From: Orbicella franksi
Lineage: Eukaryota
Assembly (NCBI GenBank): GCA_964199315.1
Contig: OZ116705.1
Coordinates: 13,268,001 to 13,332,000 of the forward strand
DNA length: 64,000 bases
Direction: 5' to 3'
Shown: piece after piece, positions 13 through 63,869 of the stretch
Numbering within the stretch: the stretch's first letter is position 1
How the letters are laid out: every line of letters starts with the position of its first letter
The notes under the pieces: generated by a model
What the model saw: the letters and a program-made list of their open reading frames with translations, nothing else
The model's database searches: none
Told to the model about the DNA's origin: nothing
Translations under genes and position numbers: made by a program

Positions 13-3000
13 CTTCGCATTGCTTTCCATAGAATCCAAGCCTGCAGTCACACTTGTATCCAGATGGCTCATCTCTGCATGTTCCCCCATTCAGACAGTA
101 GACAGAATTACACTCGCTGATCACTAATTTAATACAAAAGGAAAAGAAAAAAAAATCGGTAACTCTGAACAAGAAAAGTACATCCAAAAATGCTCCTTTA
201 AAATTATGCTATCAATGGGACTGGGCAATATCGCGAAATAATTGGCAAGTGCAGGTGTACCACGTTACTTTTTTTGAGCAATCATTTTTCTTTTTGGCTG
301 ACGGGATAATAGATCAGCTCAAATGAATGTTGGAATTGTAACTAAGCTCTGAGGCTTGAAGAACCAAAACAATAGGCATAATTTATTGGTCCCTCCACCT
401 CAAGGTGACCTCTTGTTTTATTTCCCGAAACTTCGGAGTCAAGTTAAAATTCAACGTATCCAGCTTTGCCTATTGTAAATCAATACTGACCTTCACAGGT
501 TTTTCCTTTAAAACCTTGTGGACAGTTGCAGACGTAATCATTGTTTTCCTCGAAGCAAACTCCTCCGTTCTTGCAAGGGTTTGGTGAACACTTATTAGCG
601 ACTATGGAGAAAGTATAATCTCAATATACAACTATTCCTACTTACAATAACAGGTCGCATGTCTAGAAATTATCACTTGAAATTCTATACCTGATAATTG
701 AACCTAAAGGAATTTTGAGAAAATTTTAATTAATTTAAAATTTTTAGCCTCCTTCCTTTTTTCAGCATCTTGTTCTTCTTCCTTTTTTCAATTTACTTTT
801 GAACGGTTTTTTTCCTCTACGCTTTCATTTATGGTTTCATACTCCTCATAAATTCTAGTCCATAAAAGTAGTATTTACATACAGAGGGAGCCAATACTTA
901 CTTCCACAGTTCTTTCCTTTGTATCCCTGTTCACATATGCACGTATATGATTCATCAGTCTGGCTGCATGTACCATCATTACGACAGGGATTTGGATGGC
1001 AAGGGCTTCGCGCTACATACACAAAATACAACAATTAAAAGAACCTAAAGATTGAATTGATTGCTACACGCTTTGAAAATAAAATAAAACTTTTGTTTAT
1101 TTACATTTACACATAAAATAAACGAAACCAAAAGTACCTTTCTCAATTGCGTAACGGGCACCTATTCATAGTCATCAGCCTTAGGATTTCAATTTTTTTA
1201 GTGGACAACTTTTGTGCTTCTGAGGTACTTTTGACGCTGTTGCCCACAGTATTCAATATTGACCATATCGGACCATTTGATCGTATGCCAAGGCCAATAA
1301 TGGGAATAATGGTAGTTTTATTCATCAACACAAATATCAACTCCAATGATTCCCTGCAGGCCTTTCACATAGAAGGAATTGCCCACTGCTATTAGAGTGA
1401 TTCGCTTTTCTTCATACGTCTTTGTAGCGACGTCTCACATTAAAACCGAACAAAAGGCAATTATTGAGAGTGTTAGCTTGTGCAACGAATAAATTGAAAC
1501 TGGTATTATTCTAACCTAGCAAAACTACCTTGCGAGCACTCCATAAATCTCGTGACATAATTCCAAAAAATCTCGACCGAGGTAGGTCAGTTCTAAAGCC
1601 CCAATCGACCGGAAGAGTGTCAATCGTCACCCACCTTCACAGTCATCTCCAAGGAATCCAACAGGGCAAGTACAAAGATGTCTTCCAACGGCTATTTCAG
1701 TACATGTCCCGCCGTTCTTACATGTTTCAGGTCTGCACTCTTTCTTAACTATGCAATGAAATAGAAAACCAACTGTGATACACTCGCTGGATATCCAATT
1801 TTGAGGTGCTCTAAGTTTTTTACTTGCAAGAAACTAAATCAGCAAATCTCTGGGTTAAATCCTTTTTTTTTTGTCTTCCGTTTTGTCACCAAAATATGAC
1901 AATGATAGAAGGCTAATTGTTAGTTTGCCTGGACCAAATGATGACTGCCCAAAACATTTGTTCAAATCGTAGGTACAAATTGTAAGTAAGTTGTTAGTAA
2001 TGAAAGTACACTTAAAATCTTTGAAAATAATGCCAATGCAATATCATCTCATATACACTGTACAGACATGCAGAGTCCGTTAATAGAGGGTTTTGTTGGG
2101 GTTATACTGAAGGCTGATAATTGTCCAAGATTTTAGCTGGCAACTGAAAAATGACGCATGGTTGAATTGATGGCTGAGACAAATCGACTGATAGCCGATA
2201 AGAAAAGGGCTTAAGATCTTAACTTATAACTCTTATTCCCAAGCACCGTCATCAAGAGGGCATACAGGAAACAAAGGCACTGTCTGCAAAAACATTGAGT
2301 ATTCAATAATTCAGTAGAGGGTTAATAAATTTATTCTTCGTGCTTCAGAATCACTTACCTTCACATCTCGTCCCAATGAAACCAGGTAGGCATTCGCAGT
2401 AAAAACCATGGTGTCGTGGAATGCACATCCCTCCATGGTGACACGCATGGAAGAAACATGGCCCTGCGAAAGTTATAGATGGATAACGGTTAAATAACTT
2501 TATATCGAGATAAAGAGCTCCAACAAACGCTCCAAAAATCCCCATGTTTTAAACTTGAGACAGAAGTTGTTTTCCCGCACCTACTGCTGGAAAGATTTAT
2601 TAGCTCATGATAAATTTTCTTTTCTCGACGGATTTCTAACTATTGTAGAGACGACTTTCATAATGTCCCTCTCCTAGAGGGCGACAGATTAGGGAAATCG
2701 TGATAAATACGAAATCAGGCGTCAACTTTAACATTTGCAGCTTATTTTATTTTTAAGATACTATGAAGTAATACAACAGCTGAGTTCAAGCATAACCTCT
2801 TCTCAAGAGCAATAATATTGCATTTGCCTGTATACCGGTTTGTTGAGTTAAAATTGTAACTGTGAAACGGCTTTTCGCATCTTAACCAGAAAACATATTA
2901 TGTTCATAAAAAGGAAGTAATTTATCTCACTTTTATATCTGTCAACTAAATTACATAATAGGCAACTGTCTGTTCCAATTACAAGTAGCTAAATTGGCAA

Positions 3001-3554
3001 TTAAAAAAGTTAATGCTTTCAAGCCAAACTTTTCAGCCAGGAATTTTTACGCTATTTAAAATGATAATTGATAAAAACACACTACCAATATAATTTGTTG
3101 ATATTTTCAAACGTTACTGAGCCTTTCAACTAAAAGATAAAATAACTGCAACACAAAGGTCACAGTACAGGCTAGTACCTCTTTCTCCTCGGTGAACCAG
3201 AAACATTCTTCGGTCAACGGGACTTGTCATTCGGTCGTATGGAGAAGCGGCCGCAAAAAAGTAATCCCTCTTGCTAACGTCAGGTTTATTTTGACCAAAC
3301 ACCTCATCGCTTTGTTTCCTGAACCTCTTCTTAAAAGCTCTTACTTTGCTTTTACGTAAATGTTTCCCGCCCAGCGACCGTGATTGTTCATTTAAATGGC
3401 TGTCCACCCGGACGTCTGGCAAAATGCTTTGTTTATATTCCAAACTTCGTCGAAATGATGCTCGTGTTATGACTGTTGTAGTCTTAACAAAAGTTAAATG
3501 CGATAGTATTACCAAACAATCAATCAGTGCCACAGTCAGCCAAGAACCCCGCAT
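13..3554 (-). CDS. Gene A: secreted multi-EGF protein, 5' part (continues past the left edge)
   Basis: Exons in transcript order: 3554-3179 (MRGSWLTVALIDCLVILSHLTF signal-like segment, basic KKRFRK and SKR sites, donor AGAG|GTACT), 2463-2359 (GPCFFHACHHGGMC...GTRCE), 1748-1635 (KKECRPETCKNGGTC...GDDCE), 1012-902 (RSPCHPNPCRNDGTC...GKNCG), 601-491 ([15 protein letters not shown]...GKTCE), 123-13 (ISECNSVYCLNGGTC...GKQCE). All junctions are GT-AG and phase 1, and the frame stays open. Confidence 0.85.
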
Positions 3555-62200: not shown

Positions 62201-63869
62201 TTGTTGTTATTTTGGGAGGCTGTTTTTAAAATGTTATCGAGATTTTTTTTTCTTATACTGAATATTAAAATTCTCACCTTTAAACTACTATTGAAGAGCC
62301 ATAAATATGGTTAAGTTGAAAGAAAAAATAGCCACAGAAAACTCACTTGGCATCCTAAAACTATACTCCAGTTAAAGAACAATCTTATCTGTAAAAATAT
62401 GCAAAAAAATCTTGGAACAGTTAAAGCTGCAAAATGTGAGAAGAAGAAGTTTAAGCTGTGCTATTGTCAACAAACTGCGCCTTCGTATTTGGCATAACAA
62501 CATGAAAATAACGATGCACAAAGAGAATGATGATATATTCCACTTACCTCGTGAAATAGCGAGAGCTGGATATTCCACGATGTCTCTTCGCATTAGGATA
62601 CAGCCGCATTTTCCATGGTTAGTGTACGGAATTACCGTAAGGCATCATAATGGTTAAGCTGATTTCAACTCTCCGAATGCGGCTGTAACCTAGTGAGAAG
62701 ATAACTTGGGGTACTTCTTTTATACACCAAGAAATGTTCTCCCTGGATCTTTCCTGGCCAAAGTTCTAAGAACCCTGACAACCATTTCTTAAAAAAAAAA
62801 AATCAAACGATTATCCTATTTAACTTATTGGATATGTACGCGTTAACTATCCGTAGACGTATTGTTATTAATTAACACTCGGTAAAAGTTTCCACTAATA
62901 TATGGTTTATTATTTTAGAAAAAAACGCTTGCGATCCTAATCCTTGCCACAACGGTGGAGCATGTTCACAACAAGGCGACCATTACAAATGTACCTGCAA
63001 GAGAGGTTACACAGGAGAGCAGTGTAAAAGTAAGACTATTACGATGGTTGTTCTTGGGCAAGACACTTTACTCTCACCGCGCCTCTCTCCACCCAGGTGT
63101 ATAAATGGGTACTGGCGTATAGTTAATGTTGGGGGTAGCCCTGCGATGGACTAGCATCCCATCCCGGGGGAAGTAGAAGTACTCCTAGTCGCTTCATGCC
63201 ACTGAAACAGGAGATAAGCGCCTGCCTGATGGGCCACCTGGCTCGCTTACAGACTTGCCTTTTACCATATCTGTAACGATGGATAATCAAACTGCTACAA
63301 TTGAGAAAGAGGAATAATTTCAGGTACACCTTTCGACAATGCGGATGTGAAAAGAGCTGCTCGTTTCACTTAATTTCAAAGTGATAGGCCCGTAGATGTT
63401 TTAACCAATTGTTCCATTTATATGTTTAATTTTATCTCTGAATCTTTCTCATCCTCAGTCTCATTGTAAGTATCTTTTTAAACCACAGTGGTTGACAGTT
63501 GTTTGTCCAACCCGTGTCAGCACGGAGGAACCTGCAAGACAGAGGAAGGAGGTTTTGTTTGCACTTGCACTGTGAACTACAGAGGAACGTTTTGTAATGG
63601 TAAGTTGGAAACGATGGCTATCGTCCAGTAACAAGAATTGAGAAATAACAAAATACCAAAGTTACTGTGAGTCGAGTAAAATAGTCTTTGATGTTTTGCT
63701 TTGCGCTCATTCGGCATTTCTCCCATTTTGCTTATTTTTCTTTTGATGCTTTAATCAGAGAGGGAGCCCTGCCATCCAAACCCTTGCCACAATGGAGGAA
63801 AGTGTCTCTCTACTTCCGATGGATTTGTTTGCAGATGTGCCACGGGATATAGAGGAGAAACATGTACAG
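50274..63869 (+). CDS. Gene E: secreted Leu/Ala/Gln-rich protein with at least 12 EGF-like domains (continues past the right edge)
   Basis: Exon 1 is 50274-50979 (signal [23 protein letters not shown], donor TTAG|GTATGT). EGF exons: 53667-53774, 56970-57080, 57992-58102, 58683-58799, 59763-59882, 60487-60597, 60851-60961, 61103-61213, 61844-61954, 62919-63029, 63489-63599 and 63759-63869. All are phase-1 GT-AG with 6 Cys each. Confidence 0.87.
52831..53156. mobile_element. MITE with a perfect 17-bp terminal inverted repeat (PIF/Harbinger-like)
   Basis: CCGTCCACACTAATCCG (52831-52847) pairs with CGGATTAGTGTGGACGG (53136-53152), and the element ends GGGCC. Confidence 0.8.
54043..54075. repeat. 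(CAAA)n microsatellite
   Basis: Eight perfect CAAA units. Confidence 0.95.
55350..55435 (+). mobile_element. Decayed Penelope-like retroelement fragment in a gene E intron
   Basis: [12 protein letters not shown] followed after a frameshift by [10 protein letters not shown], resembling the post-RT motif of Penelope-like ORFs. Upstream sequence from about 54600 may belong to the same relic. Confidence 0.5.
63048..63266 (+). mobile_element. 5'-truncated copy of the tRNA-derived SINE
   Basis: Aligns with the 8871-9169 copy from TTCTTGGGCAAGACACTTTACTCTCAC to GGCTCG...CAGACTTGCCTTTTAC, and lacks the tRNA-like head. Confidence 0.85.

What the first reader, a model, noticed from the sequence alone, without database searches (positions are those of the whole stretch)
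13..63869. Cluster of five modular secreted proteins: variable low-complexity N-terminus, EGF cassettes, variable C-terminal cap
Seen in sequence: five genes (A-E) share one plan of a signal peptide, a strongly basic segment with KR/RRR/KKKK sites and a low-complexity domain, all in one large exon, followed by phase-1 single-EGF exons. The low-complexity domain differs in each gene (short in A, His/Pro/VPYPV in B, Pro/Val/His in C, Gln/Gly/acidic in D, Leu/Ala/Gln in E). So do the EGF count (5+, 4, 14, 1, 12+) and the C-terminus (short tail, WSC-like domain, 11 CRDs). Established: prepro organisation with dibasic processing, Pro-rich or Gly/Gln-rich elastic domains and CRDs characterises nematocyst structural proteins (minicollagens, NOWA, cnidoin, CPP-1). 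Inference: this is a tandemly diversified kit of cnidocyst or matrix/adhesive building blocks made by exon shuffling. I do not recognise these EGF-linked architectures as a described family.
Basis: partly seen in the sequence, partly recalled or inferred. Interest (0 to 1): 0.85.

Follow-up and report, generated by a model that had tools for sequence, protein, structure and literature searches.

The report
Coral cluster of EGF stinging-capsule genes
This stony-coral DNA holds a row of six unstudied genes (five in the window) for secreted rod-like proteins; two end in the cross-linking units known from stinging-capsule walls, and part of the row is also found in a sea anemone.

Summary
Five genes in the window share one plan. 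Exon 1 encodes a signal peptide, a basic stretch and a gene-specific low-complexity domain. Single-EGF exons follow, all in phase 1-1, and then a variable C-terminal cap. B, C and D splice into complete reading frames of 864, 1063 and 1420 residues, and annotated proteins from Pocillopora, Stylophora and Nematostella match them.

Corrections:
- D has two EGFs plus a half-EGF exon.
- A ends just outside the window, with 7 EGFs and a short tail.
- E has 28 EGFs and then a Laminin_G_3 domain.
- The assembly gap lies 269 bp after B's stop codon, outside all coding sequence.

New: a sixth gene, Z, lies left of the window. It has the same plan, 18 EGFs and its own array of 11 minicollagen-type CRDs. 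The only solved-structure matches of both CRD arrays are NOWA and minicollagen CRDs. The gene order holds in other corals, and C-D-E is also kept in Nematostella, so the cluster is ancient, not recent.

Expression in stinging cells was not tested. It is inferred from the CRDs and from published Nematostella data on clustered "fibropellin-like" nematocyte markers. The scan had already noted genes D and B on this window.

Verdict: a new variant of a known kind, of moderate interest.

The parts
3179..3554 (-). Gene A exon 1: signal peptide plus a basic segment (21% K+R; RR, KKR and KR sites). It ends in a phase-1 donor.
   Evidence: The N-terminal 19-mer is hydrophobic. Orthologue: P. verrucosa 'delta-like protein 1 isoform X2', 63% identity.
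13..2463 (-). Gene A, five phase-1 EGF exons: 2359-2463, 1635-1748, 902-1012, 491-601 and 13-123. Two more EGF exons and the stop codon lie outside the window, at window coordinate about -3647.
3555..4910 (.). A-B head-to-head intergenic region of 1.36 kb. It has blocks conserved with another coral near both gene starts and is a candidate shared promoter region.
   Evidence: alignment with L003 and L004. Function not tested.
4911..6915 (+). Gene B exon 1: signal peptide, basic segment (KR, RRR) and a Pro/His/Val-rich domain ending in [12 protein letters not shown]-type repeats.
   Evidence: There are 24 orthologue clusters at 40-100% identity with many invariant columns. Up to 0.90 of its words are held in poly-A RNA runs.
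7430..9368 (+). Gene B, four phase-1 EGF exons: 7430-7549, 8162-8272, 8438-8548 and 9255-9368.
   Evidence: Pfam EGF 38.9 bits for EGF4. B1, B2 and B4 each find C1, C2 and C4 as best match.
11153..11927 (+). Gene B tail: a mini-exon at 11153-11182 and a last exon at 11824-11927 with the stop codon.
   Evidence: tblastn of P. verrucosa XP_066023246.1; splice sites and open frame
12196..12330 (.). Assembly gap, outside all modelled coding sequence and 269 bp after B's stop codon.
21793..22984 (+). Gene C exon 1: signal peptide, basic segment (KKR, RRRK) and a Pro/Val/His-rich domain.
   Evidence: There are 31 orthologue clusters at 33-99% identity. It matches a Stylophora protein named 'Neurogenic locus notch-like protein 1'.
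23462..32302 (+). Gene C, 14 phase-1 EGF exons: 11 hEGF type and 3 CxxC type (at 27735, 30476 and 32204). The count includes the exon at 29750-29878.
33841..34157 (+). Gene C last exon: a WSC-like domain followed by the stop codon.
   Evidence: Pfam WSC 24.0 bits, E 4.6e-05, below the 27.8-bit cut-off. It is 64% identical to the last exon of the gene upstream of D's orthologue in Nematostella.
37645..39529 (+). Gene D exon 1: signal peptide, basic segment (residues 23-190, 42 K+R, KRKKKK) and a Gln/Gly/Ser-rich acidic domain with net charge -56.
   Evidence: The same layout is seen in Nematostella XP_032230174.2.
40007..40120 (+). Gene D exon 2: a half CxxC-type EGF, in phase 1-1.
   Evidence: 73.5% identity to residues 650-683 of the Nematostella orthologue; splice sites. 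No Pfam hit.
40983..41783 (+). Gene D, two EGF exons: 40983-41093 (CxxC type, EGF_3-like) and 41685-41783 (tenascin/teneurin-like).
   Evidence: The CxxC type has only 16 matches in the whole genome, mostly in this cluster.
42101..44154 (+). Gene D last exon: 11 minicollagen-type CRDs with variable spacers, a conserved Met/aromatic motif and a basic tail.
   Evidence: The only PDB matches are NOWA CRDs. It has 15 relatives among 1.84 billion representative proteins. RNA runs hold up to 0.86 of its words. It is single-copy in the genome.
50274..50979 (+). Gene E exon 1: signal peptide, basic segment and a Leu/Ala/Gln/Gly-rich domain carrying the conserved [11 protein letters not shown] motif.
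   Evidence: It is 34% identical (E 1e-24) to the first exon of the 2230-residue gene downstream of D's orthologue in Nematostella.
53667..63869 (+). Gene E, the first 12 of 28 phase-1 EGF exons. The gene continues beyond the window to a Laminin_G_3 domain.

Best explanation
The window holds most of a conserved cluster of about 106 kb with six genes: Z and A on the minus strand, and B, C, D and E on the plus strand.

**Shared plan.** Each gene encodes a secreted protein with no membrane anchor. The parts, in order, are:
- a signal peptide;
- a Lys/Arg/His-rich segment with multibasic sites;
- a gene-specific disordered low-complexity domain, which ends exon 1;
- a rod of EGF modules, one per phase-1 exon;
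- a cap.

**Caps.** Z and D end in 11 minicollagen-type CRDs plus a basic tail. C ends in a WSC-like domain. E ends in a Laminin_G_3 domain. A and B end in short tails.

**Proposed role.** These are matrix proteins of the stinging organelle (cnidocyst), most likely the nematocyst.
- The CRD arrays of Z and D would reshuffle disulfides and tie the proteins into the minicollagen/NOWA polymer of the wall or tubule.
- The EGF rods would act as stiff spacers.
- The low-complexity domains would give each protein its own mechanical or adhesive character.
- The WSC-like and LamG caps of C and E would bind glycans of the tubule matrix, by analogy with NOWA's lectin domain.

**Shown here:** the gene structures, the CRD identity, the conservation and synteny, and transcription of B and D.

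**Inferred:** the cell type, cleavage of the basic segment, and all protein-level roles.
For: **Architecture.** Z is a 20-exon open model of 4275 nt ending in 11 CRDs and a basic tail.

**CRD identity.**
- The spacing CX3CX3CX3CX3CC is the defining CRD pattern (PMC4863159).
- Among 177,635 distinct PDB sequences, D's CRD exon matches only NOWA CRDs. Z's matches NOWA and minicollagen CRDs, apart from one chance-level hit at E 4.8. E-values for the CRD matches are 0.011-0.03, for example 13 of 19 residues identical to a NOWA CRD.
- NOWA oligomerises through its 8 CRDs, a number its authors call unusually high (PMC10014300).

**Other features.**
- Cnidoin has the same logic: signal peptide, a long propeptide ending in KR, and a Gly/Gln-rich core with CRDs (PMC4321713).
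- No hydrophobic segment exists apart from the signal peptides.
- The rare CxxC-type EGF links Z, C, D and E. It has 16 matches in the genome, almost all in this cluster or in one second locus.

**Conservation.**
- The same gene order is found on another coral's contig.
- C-D-E is found in Nematostella.
- Orthologues exist in Pocillopora, Stylophora, Acropora and Porites.

**Expression.** B exon 1 and D's CRD exon are held in the same poly-A RNA runs.

**Published context.** In Nematostella, consecutive Cnidaria-specific 'fibropellin-like' genes NV2.5916-5918, and a second run NV2.6437-6441, are nematocyte markers co-expressed with minicollagens (PMC12549020, supplement read).
Against: - No cell-type or protein-localisation data were obtained for any of these genes.
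- The link between the Nematostella C-D-E orthologues and NV2.5916-5918 is a guess. The identifiers could not be cross-referenced.
- A, B, C and E have no CRD.
- Known nematocyst propeptides are described as ending in KR. The long, strongly basic segments here are not shown to be propeptides.
- The PDB E-values for the CRDs are weak in absolute terms.
- NCBI annotates Stylophora and Pocillopora isoforms of Z that stop before the CRD exon.
- NV2.5917 and NV2.5918 peptides were detected in Nematostella mesoglea preparations. If these are the orthologues, a role outside the capsule stays possible.
Confidence: 0.55

Rival explanations
1. Mixed cluster. Only the CRD-capped genes Z and D serve the cnidocyst. 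A, B, C and E are general extracellular-matrix, mucus or adhesive proteins made by other cell types, and the linkage only reflects shared ancestry.
For: - A, B, C and E lack CRDs.
- hEGF exons of this kind are very common in the genome, with about 1,700-1,800 candidate matches.
- Other Nematostella poly-EGF genes mark mucous gland cells or sperm.
- An Acropora fragment of C is auto-named 'adhesive plaque matrix protein 2-like'.
Against: - All six genes share the same first-exon plan and phase-1 design.
- C and E share the rare CxxC-type EGF with Z and D.
- C-D-E linkage has been kept since corals and sea anemones split.
- In Nematostella, whole runs of neighbouring fibropellin-like genes are nematocyte markers together.
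Confidence: 0.25
2. None of the genes is cnidocyst-specific. The cluster encodes mesoglea or surface matrix proteins, and the CRD-like arrays are generic disulfide cross-linkers.
For: - EGF, WSC-like and LamG domains are ordinary matrix modules.
- Fibropellin-like-5 and -6 peptides occur in Nematostella mesoglea isolates.
- No expression data by cell type were obtained here.
Against: - The CX3CX3CX3CX3CC unit is described only from cnidocyst proteins (PMC4863159, PMC4321713, PMC10014300).
- The only meaningful PDB matches (E up to 0.13) are NOWA and minicollagen CRDs.
- The same Nematostella fibropellin-like genes are highly specific nematocyte markers, detected in about 1% of cells outside those clusters.
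Confidence: 0.12
3. Skeletal organic matrix proteins used in coral calcification.
For: - The organism is a stony coral.
- Skeleton proteomes contain proteins with EGF and laminin G domains and tandemly arranged matrix genes (PMC3748352, PMC4890752).
- All orthologues of B that carry a name come from stony corals.
Against: - C, D and E have orthologues in the non-calcifying Nematostella.
- The skeletal 'EGF and laminin G' proteins are neurexin-like membrane proteins with one EGF, unlike E.
- The main text of the Stylophora skeletal proteome paper has no fibropellin, notch or Fat-4 entries.
Confidence: 0.04
4. Notch/Delta-type or protocadherin-type signalling or adhesion receptors, as the automatic database names suggest.
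For: Public names include 'delta-like protein', 'Neurogenic locus notch-like protein 1', 'Notch-like protein 2' and 'Protocadherin Fat 4'.
Against: - There is no transmembrane segment.
- Pfam, run on the large exons and on representative EGF exons, finds only EGF-type domains, a sub-threshold WSC match and, in E outside the window, Laminin_G_3; it finds no DSL, LNR, ankyrin or cadherin domain.
- The 'Fat 4' entry is a fused model of C's tail and D.
Confidence: 0.03

Closest known systems
NOWA (nematocyst outer wall antigen; Hydra, four paralogues in Nematostella)
   Same: It is a secreted cnidocyst protein with a C-terminal array of minicollagen-type CRDs, which make disulfide-linked oligomers. 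It also has a non-CRD domain that binds matrix glycans. Single CRDs of D and Z match solved NOWA CRDs.
   Different: NOWA has SCP/CAP and C-type lectin domains and 8 CRDs. Z and D have neither of those domains, carry 11 CRDs each, and add EGF modules and long low-complexity domains. No CAP domain lies on the cluster's chromosome-scale contig.
Cnidoin (Hydra nematocyst elastomer)
   Same: It has a signal peptide, a long N-terminal pro-region ending at a basic site, a Gly/Gln-rich disordered core and CRDs for coupling to minicollagens (PMC4321713). D has the same sequence of parts.
   Different: Cnidoin has one CRD at each end and a hydrophobic, Met/Cys-rich GXGQQ repeat. D's core is acidic (net charge -56), has no GXGQQ motif, and is followed by EGF modules and 11 CRDs.
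Minicollagens
   Same: The same six-cysteine CRD unit. Z's CRD at exon residues 229-247 matches the solved minicollagen-1 CRD at 12 of 18 residues.
   Different: None of the six proteins has a Gly-X-Y collagen run or a polyproline stretch of four or more prolines.
Nematostella cnidocyte 'fibropellin-like' and poly-EGF matrisome genes (NvFp-like-4/-5/-6 and others; PMC12549020)
   Same: They are Cnidaria-specific secreted EGF-repeat proteins encoded by neighbouring genes and are nematocyte markers. Orthologues of Z are auto-named 'fibropellin-1-like'. These may be the very orthologues of C, D and E.
   Different: The paper lists them by name only. In the main text and the supplements I read, it does not describe CRD caps, low-complexity first exons, the gene cluster or coral counterparts. 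Identity with the genes here is not established.
Sea-urchin fibropellins and Notch/Delta-type EGF-repeat proteins
   Same: Long arrays of hEGF modules, each on a phase-1 exon.
   Different: Those proteins have avidin-like, DSL, LNR or transmembrane parts that are absent here. The resemblance covers the EGF repeats only.

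Membership tests
Proteins carrying minicollagen-type CRDs (cnidocyst wall and tubule polymer) | Six-cysteine unit with the spacing CX3CX3CX3CX3CC | tested here: met
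   D has 10 exact units and 1 with CX3CX4 spacing. Z has 10 exact units and 1 with CX3CX5 spacing. No such pattern occurs elsewhere in six frames of the window and the flanks scanned with it. The pattern definition is from PMC4863159.
Proteins carrying minicollagen-type CRDs (cnidocyst wall and tubule polymer) | Sequence similarity to experimentally solved CRDs | tested here: met
   For both exons the only matches with E up to 0.2 among 177,635 PDB sequences are NOWA (2hm3-2hm6) and minicollagen (1sop, 1sp7) CRDs. E-values are 0.011-0.03, weak because the domain is about 20 residues long.
Proteins carrying minicollagen-type CRDs (cnidocyst wall and tubule polymer) | Expression in developing cnidocytes and incorporation into the capsule or tubule | not testable with these tools
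   Only bulk RNA presence was shown. Published nematocyte markers NV2.5916-5918 could not be mapped to these genes.
Proteins carrying minicollagen-type CRDs (cnidocyst wall and tubule polymer) | Signal peptide followed by a propeptide that ends at Lys-Arg | tested here: inconclusive
   Signal peptides and several KR, KKR, RRR and KRKKKK sites are present in all six genes. Neither the cleavage site nor the nature of the propeptide can be read from sequence.
Minicollagen proper | Central Gly-X-Y collagen helix flanked by polyproline | tested here: not met
   There is no run of four or more Gly-X-Y triplets and no run of four or more prolines in any of the six models.
NOWA | SCP/CAP domain plus a C-type lectin domain before the CRD array | tested here: not met
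   Pfam finds neither domain in the exons scanned. None of the 54 CAP matches in the genome lies on this contig.
Cnidoin | Repetitive GXGQQ-type Gly/Gln/Met-rich elastic core flanked by single CRDs | tested here: not met
   D's core is 19% Gln and 13% Gly but acidic, with no GXGQQ motif. Its CRDs form a C-terminal array of 11.
EGF-like domain (Pfam PF00008, hEGF type) | Pfam score above the gathering threshold | tested here: met
   38.9 and 32.7 bits against a cut-off of 21.5 for the tested exons of B and E. The CxxC-type exons reach only sub-threshold EGF_3 scores of 24.1 and 21.3 against 28.5.
WSC domain (PF01822) | Pfam score above the gathering threshold, or a confident fold match | tested here: inconclusive
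   24.0 bits in the coral and 24.4 bits in Nematostella, against a cut-off of 27.8. The AlphaFold model had a mean pLDDT of 61, too poor for a fold search.
Notch/Delta or protocadherin receptors (the database names) | Transmembrane segment plus DSL, LNR or cadherin domains | tested here: not met
   There is no hydrophobic 19-mer apart from the signal peptides, and the Pfam scans found no such domains.
[quoted passage not shown] | Neurexin-like layout: 1-2 laminin G domains, one EGF and a transmembrane domain | tested here: not met
   E has 28 EGFs, one Laminin_G_3 domain and no membrane segment. The description of the skeletal proteins is from PMC4890752.

The most novel reading that the evidence does not exclude
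Z and D define an undescribed class of cnidocyst proteins in which an 11-unit CRD cross-linker caps an EGF rod (Z) or an acidic Gln/Gly-rich spring (D). The whole six-gene locus would be a co-regulated cnidocyst-matrix gene cluster that dates back to the common ancestor of stony corals and sea anemones. Alternative use of the CRD exon (isoforms with and without it are annotated in Stylophora and Pocillopora) would switch a protein between a soluble form and a wall-bound form.
Probability: 0.2. Interest if true: 0.75.

Novelty: new variant of a known kind. Interest (0 to 1): 0.52.

Why it matters
Few structural components of the cnidocyst have been characterised: minicollagens, NOWA, cnidoin, CPP-1, spinalin and nematogalectins. 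Most of that work is in Hydra.

If these genes do serve the cnidocyst, this locus adds a family of six linked proteins conserved across stony corals, at least three of them also found in a sea anemone. The family couples the capsule's disulfide cross-linking unit to EGF rods and to six different disordered domains. That gives concrete candidates for how capsule and tubule mechanics are tuned.

It also corrects misleading public names such as Notch-like, delta-like and Fat 4. The cluster is a clean example of module exchange through phase-1 exons. The Nematostella orthologue of D (LOC116613828) makes the idea testable in a laboratory model.

Tried and rejected
- **Read mapping.** No splice junction was checked with reads.
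- **Shared ancestry of first exons.** Pairwise BLASTP of the six first exons found nothing. A profile comparison of B and C gave a weak match only at the exon-1 ends (probability 37%, E 3.6e-4).
- **NOWA genes next to the cluster.** No CAP domain lies on this contig. Rejected.
- **E as the skeletal 'EGF and laminin G' protein.** Rejected, because that protein has a different layout.
- **Spirocyst rather than nematocyst.** I considered this, but the published fibropellin-like markers are nematocyte markers, not spirocyte markers.
- **ESM Atlas search with D's CRD exon.** No usable hit.
- **Structure of the WSC-like exon.** Mean pLDDT was 61, so I ran no fold search.
- **Literature searches for ten orthologue accessions and locus ids and five NV2 gene ids.** No paper.
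- **The Hydra nematocyst proteome paper (PMC3323026).** Not held.
- **The Hydractinia nematocyst proteome and two cnidocyte preprints.** They do not mention EGF or CRD proteins.
- **D's CRD exon against the coral's own genome.** It found only itself and missed Z's array, so such searches undercount CRD genes.

Full report
**What the window is.** It is stony-coral DNA. RNA runs that hold its exons are labelled as coral samples. It sits at 13.27-13.33 Mb of a 31-Mb contig. Orthologue identities are about 52% to Pocillopora and 42-43% to Acropora and Porites. This suggests a coral of the 'robust' group, but I did not pursue the species.

**Checking the observation.** A six-frame scan finds 37 EGF cysteine patterns in the window, each on the strand of its proposed gene.
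- Every one has an AG acceptor and a GT donor that place it on an exon in phase 1-1.
- Each large first exon ends at a phase-1 donor.
- B, C and D join into complete reading frames of 864, 1063 and 1420 residues. All introns are GT-AG and only the terminal stop is present.
- Independent gene models agree. P. verrucosa XP_066023246.1 matches B through exon 1, the four EGFs, a 10-codon mini-exon and the last exon. A Stylophora protein matches C through exon 1 and EGF1-5. Nematostella XP_032230174.2 matches D over 1064 residues and revealed an exon I had missed, at 40007-40120.
- The first exons begin with hydrophobic signal peptides, followed by Lys/Arg-rich stretches with multibasic sites. Then come domains of quite different composition.

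**The gap.** B's stop codon is at 11925-11927 and the gap starts at 12196. The next gene, a rhodopsin-type receptor, starts near 17793. No coding exon depends on the unread letters. I did not try to fill them.

**Beyond the window.** I fetched the flanks from the same genome.
- Gene A does not continue as a long EGF chain. Its seventh EGF exon has no donor and runs into a 15-residue tail and a stop. A 384-residue Pocillopora orthologue agrees.
- Immediately beyond lies a sixth gene, Z, on the same strand. Its first exon has a signal peptide, a basic stretch and a Pro-rich domain. It is followed by 18 phase-1 EGF exons and a last exon with 11 CRDs and a basic tail.
- Z has 20 exons and 4275 nt with no internal stop.
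- Stylophora and Pocillopora 'fibropellin-1-like' proteins match Z at 70% identity through the 18 EGFs. A P. meandrina model carries the CRD array and the same tail.
- E continues to 28 EGFs. It then has a Laminin_G_3 domain (E 3.8e-11) split over several exons, and probably an 833-residue low-complexity last exon.
- So the plan recurs six times, and the CRD cap recurs twice.

**Are the CRDs real?**
- The spacing CX3CX3CX3CX3CC is the published definition of the unit (PMC4863159).
- The pattern occurs 22 times in the cluster, all in the two last exons, and nowhere else in the regions scanned.
- Against all solved structures, D's CRD exon hits only NOWA CRDs, and Z's hits NOWA and minicollagen CRDs apart from one chance-level match.
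- The proteins are not minicollagens, NOWA or cnidoin. They have no collagen triplets, no CAP or lectin domains and no GXGQQ repeat.

**Relationships inside the cluster.**
- The six first exons share no detectable similarity.
- B and C are paralogues. B's EGF1, 2 and 4 find C's EGF1, 2 and 4 as best partners. In the whole genome, the best non-self match of B's EGF4 is C's EGF4. The ends of their first exons align weakly at the profile level.
- The short CxxC-type EGF is rare, with 16 matches in the genome. It is found almost only in Z, C, D and E and in a second poly-EGF locus 4.1 Mb away on the same contig.
- Ordinary hEGF exons are too common and too short to resolve further.
- All module boundaries are in phase 1, including those of the CRD and WSC-like exons. 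By established knowledge of modular matrix genes, this is the condition for exon shuffling.

**Age and conservation.**
- On another coral's 1.5-Mb contig, the order and orientation are the same: A (minus strand), then B, the WSC-like exon, D exon 1, D's CRD exon and E exon 1.
- In Acropora, the B and C orthologues carry consecutive accession numbers on one contig.
- In Nematostella, the D orthologue is flanked upstream by a 1276-residue EGF gene. That gene ends in the same WSC-like exon (64% identity, same stop).
- Downstream lies a 2230-residue poly-EGF gene whose first exon is homologous to E's (34%, E 1e-24).
- The cluster therefore predates the split between corals and sea anemones. Each 'low-complexity' N-terminus is under constraint. 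B has dozens of invariant columns across 20 sequences.

**Function.** B's first exon and D's CRD exon are present in the contigs of the same poly-A RNA runs, so both are transcribed. I could not obtain cell-type data. The argument for the cnidocyst rests on three points:
- the CRD arrays of Z and D;
- the cnidoin-like and NOWA-like logic of the proteins (PMC4321713, PMC10014300);
- a published Nematostella data set in which runs of neighbouring, Cnidaria-specific 'fibropellin-like' genes are sharp markers of nematocyte clusters, alongside minicollagens 1, 4 and 6. These are NV2.5916-5918 and NV2.6437-6441 (PMC12549020).

The parallel with three consecutive EGF genes around D's orthologue, and with the coral's second locus, is suggestive. 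The identifiers could not be matched, so it stays a lead.

**Verdict.**
- The family is real, conserved, uncharacterised and mislabelled in databases.
- The CRD-capped EGF architecture is not described in anything I could find. However, EGF-repeat proteins are already listed as part of the sea-anemone cnidocyte matrisome.
- I rate it a new variant of a known kind, of moderate interest.
- The scan had already noted genes D and B on this same window (s1-198443, s1-198489). It had also noted another CRD-capped gene cluster elsewhere in this genome (s1-198440), which I did not examine.

Noticed in passing
outside the window: window coordinates -5281 to -23718, minus strand (loci L007, L005, L026): A sixth gene, Z, with the same plan: a Pro-rich first exon, 18 EGF exons and an exon of 11 CRDs with a basic tail. 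NCBI lists Stylophora and Pocillopora isoforms that stop just before the CRD exon, so use of the cap may be alternative.
   Followed up: yes
window 17769-19013, plus strand: A single-exon rhodopsin-family receptor gene (Pfam 7tm_1, E 5.7e-15) sits between B and C. Some Acropora and Porites gene models fuse B and C across this position.
   Followed up: partly
same contig, 17.38-17.54 Mb (loci L010-L025): A second poly-EGF locus with about 97 EGF patterns in four runs. One run shows a roughly periodic pattern of five hEGFs then one CxxC-type EGF. One first exon has a signal peptide and a low-complexity domain. The locus has no CRDs and may parallel the second run of nematocyte-specific fibropellin-like genes in Nematostella.
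   Followed up: partly
outside the window: window coordinates 79464-81962, plus strand (L008:5464-7962): An 833-residue open frame, low in complexity and ending in a strongly basic tail, lies after E's Laminin_G_3 exons. It is probably E's last exon, since the Nematostella orthologue has 2230 residues, but this was not shown.
   Followed up: partly
window 3555-4910: The A-B head-to-head spacer holds conserved non-coding blocks shared with another coral, for example about 150-220 bp upstream of B's start codon and near A's start. This suggests shared regulation.
   Followed up: partly
window 8798-9316, minus strand: A 172-residue open frame lies inside B's fourth intron and overlaps the start of B's EGF4 exon by 62 bases on the opposite strand. 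It looks like a repeat-derived sequence. I did not examine it.
   Followed up: no
window 42900-42990 (D CRD exon, around residues 270-300): A Met/aromatic-rich motif (FRNAMSWFGMMNFLNMMYNM) between CRD 4 and CRD 5 is nearly identical in the coral, Stylophora and Nematostella, far better conserved than the surrounding spacers. Its role is unknown.
   Followed up: no
proteins P0037 and P0038: Two other secreted proteins of unknown origin have a basic N-terminus, six CRDs spread between long low-complexity stretches (one with DSIHR repeats) and no EGF. They are further members of the wider group of CRD proteins.
   Followed up: no
protein P0026 = PFX12157.1 (Stylophora): The public entry 'Protocadherin Fat 4, partial' is a fused gene model joining the tail of C to D's EGF and CRD exon. 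It is not a cadherin.
   Followed up: yes
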